Shown here piece after piece: positions 7,184-22,100 of a stretch of 64,000 nt of DNA. Source of the DNA: Octopus sinensis (taxonomy: Eukaryota). The stretch is taken from assembly GCF_006345805.1 (NCBI RefSeq), contig NC_042997.1, positions 207,390,001-207,454,000 on the forward strand, read 5' to 3'. How positions within the stretch are numbered: the first letter of the stretch is position 1; each line of letters starts with the position of its first letter. Under the pieces are notes generated by a model, which saw nothing but the letters and a program-made list of their open reading frames with translations, was not told the DNA's origin and ran no database searches. Both the position numbers and the translations under genes were made by a program.

Positions 7184-10100
7184 GTGAGTAAATAGATTCA
7201 TGTAACTTATTTATATTTAATTGTTATTTCATTTCCAAATGAGGAATCATTAAAGTTAATTAAAACATTTTCTCAATCAAACTCAAACATTTCATTTCCT
7301 TCACATCTGATATCTTGAGTATATCTTTTGCTAACTTTAACAACCTCAAACTTACTACAGCCATTCTGTAGAGCCTTTCTTAACAACAATATCAACTGCA
7401 ACAACGTATCTCTCTTCTCTCCACGGAATGTTCCTTAGTTGTTTACCATTAATTACTTTTGTAGGTTGATGTCATCGTTAACAGCTCCAATAGGCATCTC
7501 CAGCTTGACAAAGGGTCTATCTCCAAATTTATTCTTTTTGCTGCTGGTCTCCAAATGCAAGATGAATGTAACCAGAGATATCCTCAAGGTATTTCTGCAT
7601 CGGAAATAGCCATCACTAAAGGATATAACCTCAACTGTAAGAATGTATTTCATCTGGCATTACATGAATGGGATGAATATTATTCTCATTCAGTAAGTAT
7701 CAATCATATGATATTGATTTATTGAAACGGTTAATGTTGTGTGAGAATCATAAAGCAAATGACAGCATCCTTTTTAATATTAGTTCTTCCAAGTTATCAT
7801 TGGAAGGAAGCAGAAGATATCGATGAACAGGACACTTTTATATATAAATAGAAGGGAAAAAGCCTCATGGCCTAACAACAGTTATGCGACTGATAAATAA
7901 GACTATATTAAAACATATTTCTCTGTTTTACTCTCTGTATTGGTGAGTTTTTCTCTGTCATGGCATGAGCACTAGAGAGGTTGTCATGTCCTCAACAACA
8001 CTAAAGACTCCTCTTGGGTCTGCATTGTCTCTCTTCATTCGACAACCATTTTACACGGTGGATTGGGTCGGTTTTATTGTAGCAGCAACATGAGTGAGGT
8101 TGCCTTGTCCCTTGCAGGACTAAAGAGTGATAGGAATGACAGTTGTGAGAGGAGAATATATTTATTACAACTAAATGGTTTCTTCCTGTAAAAAGAAAAT
8201 AATTTAATAAAATGTCTATTACCATTTACTAGACACTTATTTTCTTTTAGATTCTGGCAAACTTGACTCAAATAATAACCACTTGTCTGAAAAAAGCTGA
8301 GGAATTGGGAGCAAAAAGCCTTGCATTTCCTATATTAGGAGCTGGAACATTGAAGTACCCCATTGAAATCCTACCCAGAATTATGTATGAAGCAGTGAAA
8401 AACTACTCAAATCAAAATTCAAGCCGGATCAAAGATGTTTACTTTGTCGTTTATCCTCAAGACACAGAAATTATGAAGGTTGGTTGATGATTTTGTTGTT
8501 TGTTGTTTTATGATGATGATGATCATCATCATTATTTAACATCCATTGTCCATACTGGCATGGGTTGGACTGTTTAACCAGTGCTGGCAAACTGAGGGGT
8601 TGCACCAGGCTCCGGTCTAATTTGCCATGGTTTCTATGGCTCGATGCCTTTCCTAGCACCAATCATTCTGAAAATGTAATGGGTGCTTCCTATGTGCCAC
8701 TGGCATGGATGCCACTTACATGACACTGGCAACTGCCAGTTTGCCTCTATGAGGCCCAACGCTTGAAAGATGCTTTTTACATGCCACCAGCATGGGTGTC
8801 AGTTATGTGACACCGACAATGGCTACAACTATGAATTTGCTTGGCTTGACGGCTCTTCTCAAGCATGGCATATCACAAAAGGTCTCGGTCACTAGTCATC
8901 TACGAGGCCCAATGTTTGAAGATTATGCTTCACATCTTGTCCCTTGTCTTTCTGGATCTTGCATTTCCACAGCTTCAATCCACAGGTAGAAATTGGTACT
9001 TCTTCACACAGCTGTCCACATCCATACACATCACATGACCATACCAGCACAGTTGTCGCTCTTGCACACCACATCTAATACTTGACCAACTTTTCTATCA
9101 AGACATTTACACTCTCTCTTACATTTTTGGAAGTTACCAAAGGAAATATTCTGCAATAAGTAAAGAAAATAGAAACAAAAATATGGAATCAGTTTTGTAA
9201 ATTTATTTGTTGGTGTCTTAGAATTCTTCAGTTGGAATGTTGGAATCTTTGATGTGTCTCATGGCCCTGTCTTCCATACTTTTAGGTTAGCTTGGTTTTC
9301 TTCAACTCTTCCATTCCATGATTTAATTCTTTGTAACTTGATATGGATTCAGTGCAGCTACCTCCTCCTCTACAACTACCACCACTACCACTACCTACCC
9401 ACAACATCCTTCAACAATTCCATTTTGGTTACTGACCAACCAAAAATGTGTTAATGGCACCACCAGAACACTGATGGTTTTCTTTCATTTCTGTTCTTCA
9501 AAGTGGAACGCTTTGGAAACTCTTCCCACAATTCTTTACATTTCTTCTCAAAGTTGGATGAATCAATTAAGGGGCTTCTATGCTGTGGCTTGACTTGCTA
9601 GTAATAGCAGCCAAGTGTCCCTGGCAGAGTTTTAAGGGGGTCAGATAGGATACCTTCTGCTATTTGTTTCAGCCCTTGGCATTCTGGGTTCAATTCCTAC
9701 TGGTGTCACGATTGATAAAAATATTCCAATCTTGGCAGCTGGATTGATGGAACTGGAAGAATACCAAATCTTCTTCTATGGTGTTTGTTTCATTCTGGGT
9801 TCAAATCCTGTCATAGCCATGCTGGATTGTTAATTCACTCCATCGTTTCTTTTCACACCAACCCTTGGCACTTTGGTAACTTGGTTACAGGTGCATGAGT
9901 CCTCTCTGCTGCAAGCTATCTTGTAAATTTCCAGGGCCTGTTATTGTTGTTGTTGTTGCTGCTGCTGCTGCTGTTGTTGTTGTTGTTGTTGTTATGGCGG
10001 TCAAGTATGGCAACCCATACTTGACAGGTACTTCTTCACACAGCTGTCCACATCCATACACATCACATGACCATACCAGCACAGTTGTCTTTCTTGCACA

Positions 10101-19100: not shown

Positions 19101-22100
19101 AACTTGTCTCAAATAATAACCTTTTGTCTATTCACTGCGGAGAGAATGGGAGCAAAAAGCCTTGCATTTCCTATATTAGGAGCTGGAACATTGAAGTACC
19201 CAATTGAAAACCTACCCAGAACAATGTATGAAGCAGTGAAAAACTACTCAAATCAAAATTCAAGCCGGATCAAAGATGTTTACTTTGTGGTTTATCCTCA
19301 AGACACAGAAATTCTGAAGGTTGGTTGATGTATTTGTTGTTTGTTGTTTTATGTTGATATTCTTGGAATTTACCAAAAAACAATATTCTACAAGAAACAA
19401 AGGAAATAGAAATGATCCTCATTTACAGCCCTTGTTCCATTTTGTAATGGGTGCAACATTCTGACTGGCTCCAATGAGCCACAAGGGTTTATTGAACCCC
19501 AGTGTCTGCTTTGGCATGGTTTCTATGGCTGGATGCCATTCCTAATGCCAACCACTTCACAGCATGTCCTGGGTACCTTTCTCCATTGTAACATTTGAAG
19601 CTAAGAATGTTTTGCTTGTTGTTGTTGTTGTTATTGTTTGACCCTGAGTCAGTTCCGATTCTGCAGACTGAATGTCAAAGATGCTTGTATGTCTTTCTTC
19701 TCTTCTTTTCTTCCTCCTCCTCTTCCAAGCTGCCACAACCAAGATCCACTTCACAATGCCACACCAATTATTTCTGCCCCACCTTCCCCCCTTTCTCTCC
19801 GTTTCTTGTTCTGTGACTTTTGCAAGAACATCAGTTTTAATTAGGTGGAACTTTCTCCCTATCCAAGTATGGAAATCTCCAAAATCTAACATCTGATATG
19901 GTCAACGGTTCAGTAAAAAAGCCTTGGTCAGCAAACCCTACTCTGTGTTGAGCATCAAAAGCCAGGACAGGTGGAATATGTCCACAAATTTCCTCTTTGG
20001 TCCGACACCCTTTTCATTAAAGATTTTGAGCCCTCTTTAAAAAGCCTGGTGAATTTACCATCAAGGTGATGTTGAAGCTCTTTACACTTGGCCCTGACAA
20101 GCCTTGTCCCCTTTGAAATATTCAATTTCCAGATGTCCTGAAGCTTAAGCAATCCAAGTTGTTTCCATTGTGTATGAAGAAGTTCAAAATAAAGACGCAA
20201 ATTACCTGAGAGACCCCAGGTACATTCTCTGGCTAAGACTGCCCACATTTATTCACCAAAACACTAAAAGGCAGCAAGGTATGATGTGAGAGAGATTTGG
20301 TTGTTTAATTTTAGCAGATCTGGTGACCACTTAAAGACCTCTTTCTTTGGTTCTTCTTGCAACTGTTCTTCATTCCCATGCAGTCTGTTATTAGTGTGGG
20401 GTATTATTTATCCCCGTTTAAACAAGGATGTTCCATTAGAACCAACTTTACTGCAGTAATTGCCATGAGAGTGACCCTCACATAGGCTTTTTGGAACGCC
20501 CTCTTCTTCATATCAGTAGCAAAAAGATAAATCTTTAGCACTGAGGCCACCGAATCATATGATTTCCACCGAATCACATGATTTCCACCTTGTTCTGTCT
20601 TGTCGATGATGGGCACTCGACTGCTAGAGACAGCAGTAATTCATCTCCGTTCCAGCGATATATCGATTGACACACCCTAGCACTTGTGTGTCCGTAATCT
20701 GTTGGCAACAAAAGGACTCTCTCTCAAAGTGAAAGGTAGGTTGTATGACTAGATTTTGACATTGATCTATAAGTCTGCCCTTGACAGAGCCAGATACACT
20801 CCTAAGTCAGTCATTCTGATTGTTTACTGTTTGTTCGATGTCAAATTTCTTTTCATCAGGGAACACCAGGCTGGGAAGCTTGCCTTTAGCAATCTGATGC
20901 AAGATAAGATGGCTTCTTTCCAGTCACATCACCTTATAAACTTACATAAGATCATGATGGTGGATCATCTTATAGCACCAAATACACTGATTTCAAACTT
21001 ATTTTTGCTGTGGCAGCCAGTTTTCTAAAGGATCGACTAGGATTTCACCATATATTTTCTATGGTGCTTTAGATAAGCTGAGAGGTCTTCAGAATTCTTG
21101 TTCGCTTGCCAAGACGTCTCCAAACAAGTCTGGCATACAACTGTAAAGCTCGTAGGGTAGACCATCCAAACCCGGCAATTTGTCCCTCGAGCATTCTGCC
21201 ATCACGTCCTGCACTTCCGCCGCCGTGATGGCACCTTTGCAGCGCCCTGCCTCTCTTGTCGAGAGTCGTGGTAGGCTGTGTAGGTAGGCACTGAAGTCCA
21301 CCCTACGTTCTTGCCCACCACTCGTCCCGAACAGTTGGGCAAAATGCTGTTGAAAGGCCTCACACATTTTACTTGGCTCGAGCAATTCATGCCCCTGTTC
21401 ACCTACCAGAGACCGAATGGTGGCTTTATTGCCCCTCTAGCTTCTTAACTAGCTCACCCTCTACTCTATTTCTATCTATGGCTAGTGTTTTGCTGTACCT
21501 AATCGCTTCTGCTTTTACTGCTCTCTTGAGGGCAAACCACCATTTGTTGTTGATGATGGCTCTCCTCAAAGCCCTCTTTACTAGTGTGCTAATCCAGTCT
21601 CTGAAAACTTGTCTCGATGGGAAAGACGCGTTTAGTTTCCAGTATCCGGGACCCTGCCTAAGTGTCTTACCTAAGTCTAGCATACATGTCACAAGTTTGT
21701 GATCCGTGTAGCTGACTATGTGGAATTGTGGACATCCTATGCTATCTCTATCTACTGTCCTACACAGTATCCTACCTAGATACGATCTTGACGACCCGAT
21801 GCGGTTGCTCCATGACCATGTTGGCGCATTCGGGTAGTCTAGTTGGAACCTGTCAGACAGTTGAAAGCGTCTGAGCAGGTCTCTGAGGCATTTGCATCCC
21901 CGTCTATTCCTATCTCTGCCTATGTAGTCTACATGCGTGTCCAAGGTAGCATTCCAATCCCCCACTAAGAGTAAAGGATGAGATGTTCCCAAGAATACTT
22001 CTAGACGTTGAAAGAAATCCGCCTGACCTGTTAAGGGCAGTGCATAGACTGATACGAGTCGAAAAGCATACCCATTGCTGCCATCGACATCCAGAACGAC

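What the first reader, a model, noticed from the sequence alone, without database searches (positions are those of the whole stretch)
7465..19319. Duplicated macrodomain exons are more divergent than their own introns
Seen: B1/B2 differ at 24 of 228 nt (15 aa changes, 4 purely synonymous codons) and C1/C2 at 19 of 228 nt (9 aa, 4 synonymous codons). The 5.3 kb upstream differs by only about two dozen changes, and the central approx. 450 nt of the B-C intron by about 4 substitutions. Differences form peaks over the 3' two-thirds of B, the 5' part of C and the adjacent 40 intron nt. Several codons carry 2-3 changes (GAA/CCC, AAA/TTC). The ligand loops [17 protein letters not shown] and [12 protein letters not shown] are identical; the variable residues are [12 protein letters not shown] vs [12 protein letters not shown] and [10 protein letters not shown] vs [10 protein letters not shown]. 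Established: vertebrate macro-PARPs are antiviral and their macrodomains evolve under positive selection; gene conversion opposed by selection leaves divergence peaks, as in X-linked opsins. Inference: two ADP-ribose readers are kept distinct on their target-recognition surfaces while the rest is homogenised, possibly an undescribed cephalopod host-pathogen diversification system.
Basis: partly seen in the sequence, partly recalled or inferred. Interest (0 to 1): 0.88.

Follow-up and report, generated by a model that had tools for sequence, protein, structure and literature searches.

The report
Patchwork twin macrodomains in octopus PARP gene
Two neighbouring, almost identical sets of exons encode two ADP-ribose-reader domains of one octopus PARP14-like gene. 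The few stretches where they differ strongly are old sequence patches left or pasted in by gene conversion, not a burst of new adaptive mutations, so this is a familiar evolutionary pattern in a new gene family.

Summary
Window 1703-8517 and 12518-19358 are 98.3% identical. Of 84 substitutions, 44 lie in 593 exon bases (7.4%) and 40 in 6219 other bases (0.64%).

The copies are not separate genes or alleles. Each is an exon set A-B-C followed by a 55-nt linker exon D (648 nt in all, in frame). Both belong to one macro-macro-PARP reading frame, as in an O. sinensis RefSeq model.

The exon peaks are not post-duplication adaptive point substitution. Synonymous divergence (dS 0.135) is at least as high as dN (0.091), and about 20 times the flanking divergence.

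Against the O. sinensis cassette pair, 43 informative sites group c1 with c2. Only 2+2 sites support cross-species pairings, which indicates concerted evolution. The O. sinensis pair is homogenised over different borders and shows no exon excess. The "kept distinct" surfaces are therefore not conserved.

Best reading: long-tract homogenisation plus short mosaic conversion patches within a multi-copy macro-cassette family. Selection may contribute but is unproven:
- the differing residues sit at positions that vary across the family;
- exon A shows 10 replacement versus 0-1 silent changes.

No donor was found for the two main patches. Verdict: real, a new member of a known kind, moderate interest.

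The parts
1703..8517 (+). Copy 1 (c1) of the 6.8-kb near-identical segment. It holds the 3' 5.3 kb of the preceding intron, exons A1, B1 and C1, and 39 nt of the next intron.
   Evidence: Self-BLAST 98.35% over 6844 columns. Difference list.
12518..19358 (+). Copy 2 (c2) of the same segment, with exons A2, B2 and C2.
7047..7183 (+). Exon A1: 137 nt, phase 1 to 0. It encodes a Ser/Thr/Pro-rich linker and the first macrodomain strand. It differs from A2 at one synonymous base.
   Evidence: Acceptor ttttcag and donor GTGAGT. tblastn with octopus PARP14-like proteins.
7465..7692 (+). Exon B1: 228 nt, phase 0-0. It encodes strand beta3, ligand loop 1, helix alpha1, beta4, beta5 and the beta5-alpha2 loop.
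   Evidence: Secondary structure from the model.
7536..7772 (+). Divergence patch 1, with counterpart 18356-18614. It has 24 exon substitutions, a 22-nt deletion in c1 (at 7733) and 3 intron substitutions. 18 of the exon states are private to c1, and c2 matches O. sinensis S1/S2.
8216..8243 (+). Intron-edge patch just upstream of exon C1: 6 c1-only substitutions and a 1-nt indel within 28 nt.
8251..8478 (+). Exon C1: 228 nt, phase 0-0. It encodes helix alpha2, beta6, ligand loop 2, alpha3, beta7 and the start of alpha4.
8266..8305 (+). Divergence patch 2, with counterpart 19107-19146. It has 13 substitutions in 40 nt. Here c2 is the odd one out (8 c2-only states) and c1 matches O. sinensis. 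The tail of c2's patch (AERM) also occurs in S1, T2 and O. bimaculoides.
8361..8517 (+). Weaker patch 3: 9 substitutions, mostly c1-only, running to the end of the repeat.
8518..9122 (.). Repeat-element insertion in c1 that marks the 3' border of the near-identical tract. Beyond it, 9123-9175 matches 19359-19412 at only 81%, the old paralogue divergence.
   Evidence: 8516-8732 and 8840-9115 have many dispersed copies.
11988..12042 (+). Exon D1: 55 nt, phase 0 to 1, encoding [18 protein letters not shown]. This linker exon joins C1 to A2 in frame.
   Evidence: It matches the D exon in O. sinensis model P0015. The conceptual splice is open.
12345..12512 (.). SINE-like repeat that abuts the 5' border of copy 2.
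   Evidence: Copies at 28360-28527 and 35532-35699.
17867..18003 (+). Exon A2.
18285..18512 (+). Exon B2. Every residue that differs from B1 is also seen in other family cassettes.
19092..19319 (+). Exon C2.
48806..48860 (+). Exon D2: 55 nt, phase 0 to 1, encoding [18 protein letters not shown]. It resembles the D exon of the O. sinensis P0016/L002 paralogue.
56563..56696 (+). PARP catalytic-domain exon 1. Its phase 1 start continues D2 in frame.
57084..57261 (+). PARP catalytic-domain exon 2. It contains GLWHGT.
59505..59773 (+). PARP catalytic-domain last exon. It contains YGQGVYFA and NIYVTF, and ends at the stop codon.
   Evidence: Pfam PARP 58.3 bits on the conceptual product.

Best explanation
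c1 and c2 are two tandem, in-frame PARP14-macro2-like macrodomain modules of a single macro-PARP gene. Each module is an exon set A-B-C-D of 648 nt. The gene reads macro-macro-PARP catalytic domain, and its 5' end lies outside the window.

The two-module arrangement predates the split from Octopus sinensis. In this lineage, 6.8 kb of the pair has been homogenised by non-allelic gene conversion or unequal exchange (concerted evolution). O. sinensis homogenised its own pair independently, with different borders.

The divergence peaks are short segments whose ancestry is much older than that of their flanks. They are mosaic conversion patches. Either they escaped the homogenising exchange, or they were pasted in from other members of the multi-copy macro-cassette family. 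They are not a burst of new point substitutions.

Shown here: the anatomy, the in-frame gene model, the concerted evolution, the older ancestry of the patches, and the lack of conservation of the c1/c2 difference.

Inferred: conversion as the mechanism, the source of the patches, and any role of diversifying selection on the exposed alpha1, beta5-alpha2 loop and alpha2 positions.
For: One gene, two modules:
- Exon phases and lengths are A 137 + B 228 + C 228 + D 55 = 648 nt.
- The conceptual splice A1..D1-A2..D2-PARP is open for 624 codons to the stop.
- Pfam finds Macro twice plus PARP.
- O. sinensis RefSeq XP_036355253.1 reads C-D-A-B-C-D-...-PARP.
- Sequence and fold are closest to human PARP14 macro2: phmmer E = 2.6e-25 to 3Q71 (8.8e-36 to the macro1-2 construct 3VFQ), TM 0.87.

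Concerted evolution:
- Quartet sites are c1c2|S1S2 = 43, c1S1|c2S2 = 2 and c1S2|c2S1 = 2.
- Introns differ by 2.2-3.2% between genomes, but by 0.5% (mid B-C intron) to 2.5% (intron A-B) between c1 and c2, and by 0.14% in the far upstream part of the repeat.
- The spacer with D1 is 96-98% identical to the O. sinensis spacer between S1 and S2.
- The O. sinensis tract runs from about 260 nt upstream of A to 4.35 kb downstream of C. The window's tract runs from 5.3 kb upstream to 39 nt downstream.
- The window's 3' border sits at a repeat-element insertion. Beyond it, identity is 81%.

Older ancestry of the patches:
- For B+C, dS = 0.135 and dN = 0.091 (omega 0.68).
- Eight purely synonymous codon differences are seen where 0.6 are expected at the flank rate (Poisson p = 4e-7).
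- Synonymous differences are 12/99 sites versus 40/6219 non-coding sites (p = 1e-11).
- Some codons carry 2-3 changes. A 22-nt indel and an intron-edge cluster travel with the patches.

Exchange among paralogues:
- c2's B-3' is 4-5% from S1/S2, while c1's is 13-15% from them.
- The C-3' segment exists in two types shared across paralogues and species. NQNSS.IKDVYF occurs in c1, c2, T1 and T2. [DN][LV]NSSQIKVVNF occurs in S1, S2 and O. bimaculoides.
- AERM versus AEGL/AEEL is swapped between cassettes in the two genomes.
- O. sinensis T1/T2 is also mosaic: exon A 19%, intron A-B 4.2%, exon B 5.3%, intron B-C 12%.

The difference is not conserved: S1/S2 exons 1.2% versus non-exons 1.1%.
Against: - No donor was found. 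About 13-14 of the 18 c1-only B-3' states, and the c2-only S6, F11 and F14 in C-5', are absent from all seven other cassettes sampled (O. sinensis S1, S2, T1, T2, L002a/b and O. bimaculoides L003). Import from a paralogue is therefore unverified for the two main patches. Only a handful of paralogues could be sampled, and none from the window's own genome.
- The exon bias is seen twice. It appears in c1 versus c2, and in the fixed differences between the window pair and the O. sinensis pair (32/593 exon versus 11/877 intron, p = 5e-6). Random tract ends do not predict this. It needs either selection or a reason why conversion from distant paralogues is confined to exons.
- In exon A, 10 replacement and 0-1 silent differences separate the window from O. 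sinensis. Replacement sites are 3.8 times as diverged as introns (p = 0.002). That looks like positive selection rather than conversion.
- The 5.3-kb upstream identity ends abruptly, with no detectable older homology beyond it. Simple gene conversion does not explain this. A segmental re-duplication or replacement may be involved.
- There is only one assembly, with no reads and no transcripts.
Confidence: 0.6

Rival explanations
1. Gene conversion homogenises the pair, and natural selection removes conversion tracts that would erase functionally important differences. The two macrodomains are thereby kept distinct on partner-recognition surfaces (opsin-type purifying selection against homogenisation, or diversifying selection in a host-pathogen conflict).
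For: - The signature matches L/M opsins: exon dS and dN are both far above intron divergence, and dN is at or below dS.
- The peaks coincide with exons.
- Differing residues avoid the two ligand loops and sit at family-variable positions: B 14/15 (p = 4e-4) and C 8/9 (p = 0.002).
- They cluster in alpha1, the beta5-alpha2 loop and alpha2 of the model.
- Exon A has 10 replacement versus 0-1 silent changes against O. sinensis.
- Mammalian macro-PARP macrodomains evolve under positive selection (PMC4038475).
Against: - The syntenic O. sinensis pair has lost, or never had, the distinction: exon 1.2% versus non-exon 1.1%.
- Only 2 sites show the cassette-specific cross-species pattern that this model predicts, against 18+8 private states.
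- Omega is 0.68 overall, 0.69 in B-3' and 1.14 in C-5', never significantly above 1.
- c1's private states remove two prolines present in the other octopus cassettes sampled (AAGP to AAGL, LPPW to LHEW; one O. bimaculoides cassette has AAGS and LPSW). That could equally be relaxed constraint.
- No functional data exist.
Confidence: 0.22
2. Assembly or polishing artefact. The two copies are haplotypes of one cassette placed in tandem, or a collapsed or chimeric reconstruction of several paralogues.
For: - The repeat is nearly identical and lies in a repeat-rich region.
- The private patches have no counterpart in other data.
- Only one assembly is available.
Against: - There are no Ns, and a unique 4-kb spacer carrying an in-frame exon D1 lies between the copies.
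- The flanks on the two sides are different old paralogous sequence.
- Independent O. sinensis contigs (L001, L004) and a RefSeq model show the same cassette-D-cassette order.
- Both copies keep open frames and canonical splice sites.
Confidence: 0.06
3. Recent duplication followed by rapid adaptive point substitution (classical positive selection after duplication) in exons B and C.
For: There are many amino-acid changes (24) in two exons, while the introns are almost identical.
Against: - Synonymous sites are as diverged as replacement sites, and about 20 times the flank rate.
- Omega is below 1.
- An indel and an intron-edge cluster are included in the patches.
- The two-cassette structure is older than the species split.
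Confidence: 0.03
4. Module 1 is partly decaying. The c1 B-3' patch was copied from, or is evolving like, a non-functional cassette. Pseudo-exons exist in the family.
For: - c1 B has 8 residues unseen in 8 other cassettes, including the loss of two prolines present in the other octopus cassettes sampled. c2 B has none.
- Omega is about 0.7 in the patch.
- Broken cassettes exist in O. sinensis: the L002 B exon is frameshifted, and the L005 T1 exon C has an 11-nt deletion.
Against: - The reading frame and splice sites of c1 are intact, and both ligand loops are untouched.
- Pfam Macro scores 66.9 bits for c1 versus 71.6 for c2.
- The model is confident outside loops: pLDDT 80.8, TM 0.87 to PARP14 macro2.
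Confidence: 0.05

Closest known systems
Primate X-linked L/M opsin genes (gene conversion in introns, divergence retained in exons 3 and 5; PMC3213168)
   Same: - Tandem paralogues with introns more alike than exons.
- Exon dS and dN are both above intron divergence.
- dN/dS is not above 1.
- Conversion tracts are detectable by permutation.
   Different: - In opsins, the exon differences are the same in many species and map to known spectral-tuning sites.
- Here the differences are private to one genome and absent from the O. sinensis pair. Their functional meaning is unknown.
- The units here are domain-encoding exon sets inside one gene, not two genes.
Vertebrate macro-PARPs PARP14, PARP15 and PARP9 (several tandem macrodomains plus a mono-ART domain; positive selection and gene turnover, PMC4038475)
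   Same: - Architecture of tandem macrodomains followed by a PARP catalytic domain.
- The modules are most similar in sequence and fold to PARP14 macro2 and PARP9 macro2.
- The multi-copy family carries signs of rapid change.
   Different: - No WWE-like exon and no E exon were found in the window.
- The N-terminal part is unknown.
- Orthology to PARP14 is not established.
- The diversification signal here is concerted evolution with mosaic patches, not a site-wise dN/dS above 1.
- Interferon or antiviral involvement in cephalopods is unknown.
Mosaic (patchwork) evolution of tandem multigene families by interlocus gene conversion (for example MHC class II, SIGLEC11/16 PMC5701461, C. elegans paralogues PMC3966223)
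   Same: - Paralogues within a genome are more alike than orthologues.
- Short segments have discordant ancestry.
- Sequence motifs are shared and re-assorted among paralogues and species.
- Pseudo-copies are available as potential donors.
   Different: Donors for the two main patches were not identified, and the exchange partners are domain modules within and between macro-PARP genes.

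Membership tests
Macro domain (Pfam PF01661), PARP14-macro2-like reader type | Significant match to the Macro profile. 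| tested here: met
   c1 module 66.9 bits and c2 module 71.6 bits, against a cut-off of 22. Two stretches are found in the conceptual product.
Macro domain (Pfam PF01661), PARP14-macro2-like reader type | Macro fold, closest to PARP14 macro2. | tested here: met
   The AlphaFold model has pLDDT 80.8 and pTM 0.80. Foldseek's top hits are 5O2D, 4D86 and 3Q71 (PARP14 macro2), with TM 0.85-0.87, rmsd 1.9 A and 30% identity. phmmer to 3Q71 gives E = 2.6e-25.
Macro domain (Pfam PF01661), PARP14-macro2-like reader type | The two ADP-ribose-binding loops are present: loop 1 after beta3 and the glycine-rich loop 2 after beta6. | tested here: met
   [16 protein letters not shown] aligns with PARP14 macro2 [29 protein letters not shown] aligns with AFPAIGTGNLGFP. 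Both loops are identical in c1 and c2.
Macro domain (Pfam PF01661), PARP14-macro2-like reader type | Actual ADP-ribose or MARylated-protein binding, and absence of hydrolase activity. | not testable with these tools
   Needs recombinant protein assays.
Macro-PARP (PARP9/14/15-type gene) | Macrodomain(s) and a PARP catalytic domain encoded in one gene. | tested here: met
   The exon phases allow an open 624-codon conceptual splice from A1 to the stop at 59773. Pfam finds Macro twice plus PARP at 58.3 bits against a cut-off of 26.7. O. sinensis models P0015 and P0016 have the same layout. There is no transcript evidence for the window itself.
Macro-PARP (PARP9/14/15-type gene) | WWE domain between the macrodomains and the catalytic domain (as in PARP14). 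| tested here: not met
   The exons for P0015 residues 292-475 (the acidic E exon and the WWE-like exon) have no match anywhere in the window.
Macro-PARP (PARP9/14/15-type gene) | Mono-ART type catalytic triad (H-Y-[ILV]) rather than H-Y-E. | tested here: inconclusive
   Read by eye from the translation: [14 protein letters not shown] and NIYVTF suggest H-Y-I. This was not checked against a structure-based alignment.
Concerted evolution by interlocus gene conversion or unequal exchange | Paralogues within a genome are more alike than the positional orthologues between genomes. | tested here: met
   43 sites support c1c2|S1S2, against 2 and 2 for the alternatives. c1/c2 non-exon divergence is 0.64%, while introns between the genomes differ by 2.2-3.2%.
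Concerted evolution by interlocus gene conversion or unequal exchange | Significant mosaic structure, with tract borders that differ between lineages. | tested here: met
   Permutation p <= 1e-4. The window tract is 1703-8517, while the O. sinensis tract is about L004 320-6380.
Selection against homogenisation (opsin-type) | The paralogue-specific exon differences are conserved across species. | tested here: not met
   S1/S2 show no exon excess (7/593 versus 58/5450, p = 0.83). Only 2 cassette-specific cross-species sites were found. Only one other species with both cassettes could be examined.
Selection against homogenisation (opsin-type) | Exon dS and dN both exceed intron divergence. | tested here: met
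   dS 0.135 and dN 0.091 versus 0.0064.
Positive (diversifying) selection on the macrodomains | dN/dS significantly above 1 at codons or segments, under a recombination-aware model. | tested here: inconclusive
   Pairwise Nei-Gojobori omega is 0.68 for B+C, 1.14 for C-5' (not significant), and 10:0-1 in exon A against O. sinensis (one-sided p about 0.06). No codon site models (PAML or HyPhy) were available, and the mosaicism would bias them.

The most novel reading that the evidence does not exclude
The macro cassettes of octopus PARP14-like genes form a germline diversification system. A bank of intact and broken cassettes, spread over several loci, feeds short exon-centred conversion patches into the expressed tandem reader modules. 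Selection in a host-pathogen conflict favours new surface combinations on alpha1, the beta5-alpha2 loop and alpha2, while the ADP-ribose pocket stays fixed. The repeated exon-over-intron excess would be the footprint of this process. The excess appears in c1 versus c2, in the fixed differences between the window pair and the O. sinensis pair, and in exon A of T1/T2.
Probability: 0.15. Interest if true: 0.7.

Novelty: new member of a known kind. Interest (0 to 1): 0.4.

Why it matters
Macro-PARPs are rapidly evolving antiviral factors in vertebrates. Nothing comparable appears to be described for cephalopods: literature searches on cephalopod or octopus macro-PARPs found only an incidental proteomic mention.

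This locus shows that Octopus carries a multi-copy PARP14-like family whose tandem reader modules evolve by concerted evolution with mosaic patches. This matters in three ways:
- It warns against reading exon-greater-than-intron divergence as positive selection when synonymous sites are equally diverged.
- It offers a tractable pair of near-isogenic macrodomains that differ at 24 surface positions, suited to testing what determines macrodomain partner specificity.
- If donors and selection are confirmed, it would extend the ADP-ribosylation arms race to molluscs.

Tried and rejected
- Tried to identify the species and the gene's own annotated product. The B1+C1 query found only 72-79% identical Octopus proteins. 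The PARP exon query found no octopus protein at all. The window's gene is therefore not in the protein collection.
- Fetching DNA for O. vulgaris P0004 failed because the gene range is too long. P0007 and P0008 are not on record.
- Exact look-ups of two window ORFs covering the variant patches found nothing. No independent confirmation of the private patches was possible.
- Error to flag: the column labelled 'Osin_L002a' was a wrong region. I misread a merged BLAST table, and the coordinates belonged to L003. That column is meaningless and was discarded. Searches use the correct cassettes.
- First thought the copies were separate short macro-only genes, as several RefSeq models are. I rejected this once the D exons, the phases and model P0015 showed an in-frame module repeat.
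- Considered mutually exclusive or alternative cassettes. I rejected this because C1-D1-A2 is in frame and the O. sinensis model joins them serially.
- Searched the window for a local donor of the private patches (tblastn and blastn). None was found.
- Considered a simple tandem duplication of a 10.8-kb unit. I rejected this because the 4-kb spacer has no second copy after c2.
- 3D distances from the variable residues to the ligand could not be computed, because no coordinates are returned. Only secondary-structure placement is given.

Full report
**1. What is there**

The window has no Ns and contains one long direct repeat: 1703-8517 (c1) and 12518-19358 (c2). The repeat spans 6844 aligned columns at 98.35% identity. 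A global alignment gives 84 substitutions and 7 indel events.

On the + strand each copy carries three exons with canonical AG/GT borders:
- A: 7047-7183 / 17867-18003, 137 nt, phase 1 to 0.
- B: 7465-7692 / 18285-18512, 228 nt.
- C: 8251-8478 / 19092-19319, 228 nt.

- B differs at 24 nt, giving 15 amino-acid changes and 4 purely synonymous codons.
- C differs at 19 nt, giving 9 amino-acid changes and 4 synonymous codons.
- The triple-change codons GAA/CCC and AAA/TTC are present.

The differences cluster at 7536-7687, at 8216-8305, and more weakly at 8361-8513. The 443-nt core of the B-C intron has 2 differences. The 5.3 kb upstream has 20 substitutions and 4 indels. Exons hold 44 substitutions in 593 nt (7.4%), against 40 in 6219 nt (0.64%). 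The odds ratio is 12.4, p = 3e-25. A permutation of polymorphic sites gives p <= 1e-4 for clustering.

**2. Gene context: one gene, two modules**

Octopus 'PARP14-like' proteins match the exons at 72-89% identity. Cluster members include full macro-PARPs from O. sinensis (P0015 = XP_036355253.1 and P0016 = XP_036358933.1). P0015 reads C-D-A-B-C-D-E-(WWE-like)-PARP.

The window has the matching 55-nt linker exons:
- D1 at 11988-12042, encoding [18 protein letters not shown], phase 0 to 1.
- D2 at 48806-48860, encoding [18 protein letters not shown].

It also has three PARP catalytic exons, at 56563-56696, 57084-57261 and 59505-59773.

A+B+C+D is 648 nt. The conceptual splice A1-B1-C1-D1-A2-B2-C2-D2-PARP is open for 624 codons up to the stop. 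It scores as Macro twice plus PARP in Pfam. The copies are therefore two tandem macrodomain modules of one macro-PARP. They are not two genes, alleles or alternative cassettes.

Each module is closest in sequence and predicted fold to human PARP14 macro2. phmmer to 3Q71 gives E = 2.6e-25 (8.8e-36 to the macro1-2 construct 3VFQ). The model has pLDDT 80.8, and Foldseek gives TM 0.87, rmsd 1.9 A and 30% identity. Both canonical ADP-ribose loops align with those of macro2 and are identical in c1 and c2. No transcript evidence is available, so the gene model is an inference.

**3. Why the peaks are not new adaptive point mutations**

For B+C, Nei-Gojobori gives dS = 0.135, dN = 0.091 and omega = 0.68. 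Eight codons differ only synonymously, where 0.6 would be expected at the flank rate (p = 4e-7). Synonymous sites are about 20 times as diverged as the non-coding part of the repeat (p = 1e-11). A 22-nt indel travels with one patch, and a cluster of 6 substitutions within 17 nt (8216-8232) of the intron edge travels with another. The patches therefore have a much older ancestry than their flanks. This is the same signature described for gibbon L/M opsins (PMC3213168).

**4. Comparison with O. sinensis**

Contig L004 (and its near-identical twin L001) holds a syntenic arrangement. Cassette S1 (577-2030) is followed by a D exon (24817-24873), then cassette S2 (32873-34350), another D, E, a WWE-like exon and PARP. 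The window's spacer around D1 is 96-98% identical to the O. sinensis spacer. Introns differ by 2.2-3.2% between the genomes.

Informative sites support c1c2|S1S2 43 times, c1S1|c2S2 twice and c1S2|c2S1 twice. This is concerted evolution in each lineage.

The O. sinensis tract has different borders, from about 260 nt upstream of A to 4.35 kb downstream of C. It shows no exon excess: 7/593 versus 58/5450, p = 0.83.

In the window, the 3' border (8517) coincides with a repeat-element insertion in c1 (8518-9122). Beyond it, the two downstream flanks are 81% identical. The downstream D exons are also unrelated in detail. The 3' parts of the modules are therefore old paralogues, and the 6.8-kb identity is secondary.

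**5. Anatomy of the patches**

- In B-3', c2 is 4-5% from S1/S2, while c1 is 13-15% from them. 18 states are private to c1.
- In C-5', the roles are reversed, with 8 c2-only states.
- In C-3' and the last 39 nt, c1 is again the odd one out.

Adding O. sinensis cassettes T1 and T2 (L005), L002a/b and O. bimaculoides L003 gives the following:
- Most c1-only B-3' states, and the c2-only S6, F11 and F14, are unique among nine cassettes.
- c2's B residues are all seen elsewhere in the family.
- c1 has 8 unseen residues, including the loss of two prolines present in the other octopus cassettes sampled (AAGP to AAGL, LPPW to LHEW).

Other segments clearly circulate among paralogues:
- The C-3' segment comes in two types shared across loci and species.
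- AERM versus AEGL/AEEL is swapped between cassettes in the two genomes.
- The B-5' loop-1 region of c1/c2 (RHLQLDKG) is 15-17% from S1/S2, including 4 synonymous changes. It resembles the T1/P0007 class (EHL.LD.G).
- O. sinensis T1/T2 is likewise mosaic: exon A 19%, intron A-B 4.2%, exon B 5.3%, intron B-C 12%.

Broken cassettes that could serve as donors exist. The L002 B exon is frameshifted, and the L005 T1 exon C carries an 11-nt deletion.

**6. Is selection involved?**

Some observations go beyond neutral patchwork:
- Fixed differences between the window pair and the O. sinensis pair are also enriched in exons: 32/593 versus 11/877, p = 5e-6.
- Exon A has 10 replacement and 0-1 silent differences. 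Its replacement sites are 3.8 times as diverged as introns, p = 0.002.
- The c1/c2 differences fall on positions that also vary among the other cassettes: B 14/15 and C 8/9. In the model these lie in helix alpha1, the beta5-alpha2 loop and the second half of alpha2.

Against a selection reading:
- Synonymous divergence between the genomes is also about 4 times the intron rate, p = 9e-5.
- Omega is never significantly above 1.
- Mosaicism would bias site models.

Diversifying selection is plausible, as in mammalian macro-PARPs (PMC4038475), but it is not shown.

**7. Verdict**

Best explanation (0.6): two tandem reader modules of one macro-PARP have been homogenised by long-tract non-allelic exchange. 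They carry short mosaic conversion patches, either escaped or imported, of older ancestry.

That claim is that selection keeps two readers distinct on recognition surfaces. It is weakened mainly by the O. sinensis pair and by the private nature of the patches.

Assembly artefact scores 0.06. The in-frame spacer exon, the distinct flanks and the independent O. sinensis arrangement all argue against it.

Post-duplication point-mutation selection scores 0.03 and is contradicted by dS.

The pattern is a known kind (concerted evolution with exon divergence peaks) in a family and phylum where it has not been described. Literature searches found no cephalopod macro-PARP study.

**8. Limits**

- The species of the window is unknown. 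It is an Octopus about 2-3% from O. sinensis in introns.
- No paralogue from the same genome could be sampled.
- No donor was found for the two main patches.
- The abrupt 5' border at 1703/12518, with no older homology beyond it, is unexplained and may indicate segmental replacement rather than simple conversion.
- No reads, transcripts or population data were available.

Noticed in passing
window 48861-56562: The acidic E exon and the 124-aa WWE-like exon of the O. sinensis macro-PARP models (P0015 residues 292-475) have no counterpart anywhere in the window. D2 nevertheless joins the first PARP exon in frame. This paralogue may therefore encode a macro-macro-PARP protein without the WWE-like region, or it may be a fusion or deletion product.
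   Followed up: partly
window 19400-48800: The 29-kb intron between C2 and D2 is packed with retroelements on the minus strand. ORF 34815-37262 (815 aa) hits RVT_1, with a weak PHD hit. ORF 32225-33415 hits RVT_1. ORF 21426-22379 hits an endonuclease/exonuclease/phosphatase domain.
   Followed up: partly
window 39991-41284 and 43349-44643; 37123-38016 and 38700-39593; 32583-33265 and 38015-38696: Three further pairs of 99.2-99.9% identical direct repeats. The first pair flanks a 571-aa ORF (41493-43208, minus strand) with no Pfam hit, which looks like an LTR-type or terminal-repeat element. The others look like recent nested retroelement copies.
   Followed up: no
L005 26630-26846 (O. sinensis chromosome CM016859.1): Exon C of cassette T1 carries an 11-nt deletion (a frameshift). 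The RefSeq model XP_036358933.1 skips it and splices B of cassette T1 to C of cassette T2, 14 kb downstream. Hybrid macrodomains built from two cassettes may therefore be expressed, or the model may be wrong.
   Followed up: partly
L002 5290-5515: A third O. sinensis cassette has a frameshifted B exon (226 nt) and no C exon nearby. It is a pseudo-cassette that could act as a conversion donor.
   Followed up: no
L005 25170-26850 versus 36155-40900: The O. sinensis T1/T2 cassette pair is also mosaic, but the bias is not consistently towards exons. Exon A differs by 19%, intron A-B by 4.2%, exon B by 5.3%, the first 300 nt of intron B-C by 12.3%, and exon C by 8.3%.
   Followed up: partly
window 6985-7030 and 17805-17850: A (TG)n/(CA)n microsatellite lies directly upstream of the polypyrimidine tract and acceptor of exon A in both copies. 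Homology to the O. sinensis and O. bimaculoides cassettes starts just after it. It may be a recombination-prone border.
   Followed up: no
window 4001-6000 and 16001-18000: A stretch inside the duplicated intron has strong positive GC skew (0.27-0.30) and raised GC (0.43-0.47). It contains a 128-aa minus-strand ORF (5009-5395 / 15825-16211) of low-complexity sequence. Its nature was not determined.
   Followed up: no
window 1703-5300 versus 5300-7500: Within the non-coding part of the repeat, divergence rises from about 0.14% in the far upstream part to about 1% near exon A. This suggests more than one exchange event of different age.
   Followed up: no
window 53612-55866: This stretch is 96.3% identical to the O. 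sinensis sequence that directly follows the second D exon (L001 20490-22727). The corresponding D exon is missing just upstream in the window, where a SINE-like element sits instead (about 53489-53587). The D2 exon that is present, at 48.8 kb, is of the other paralogue's type. This hints at a rearranged or chimeric 3' half of the gene.
   Followed up: partly
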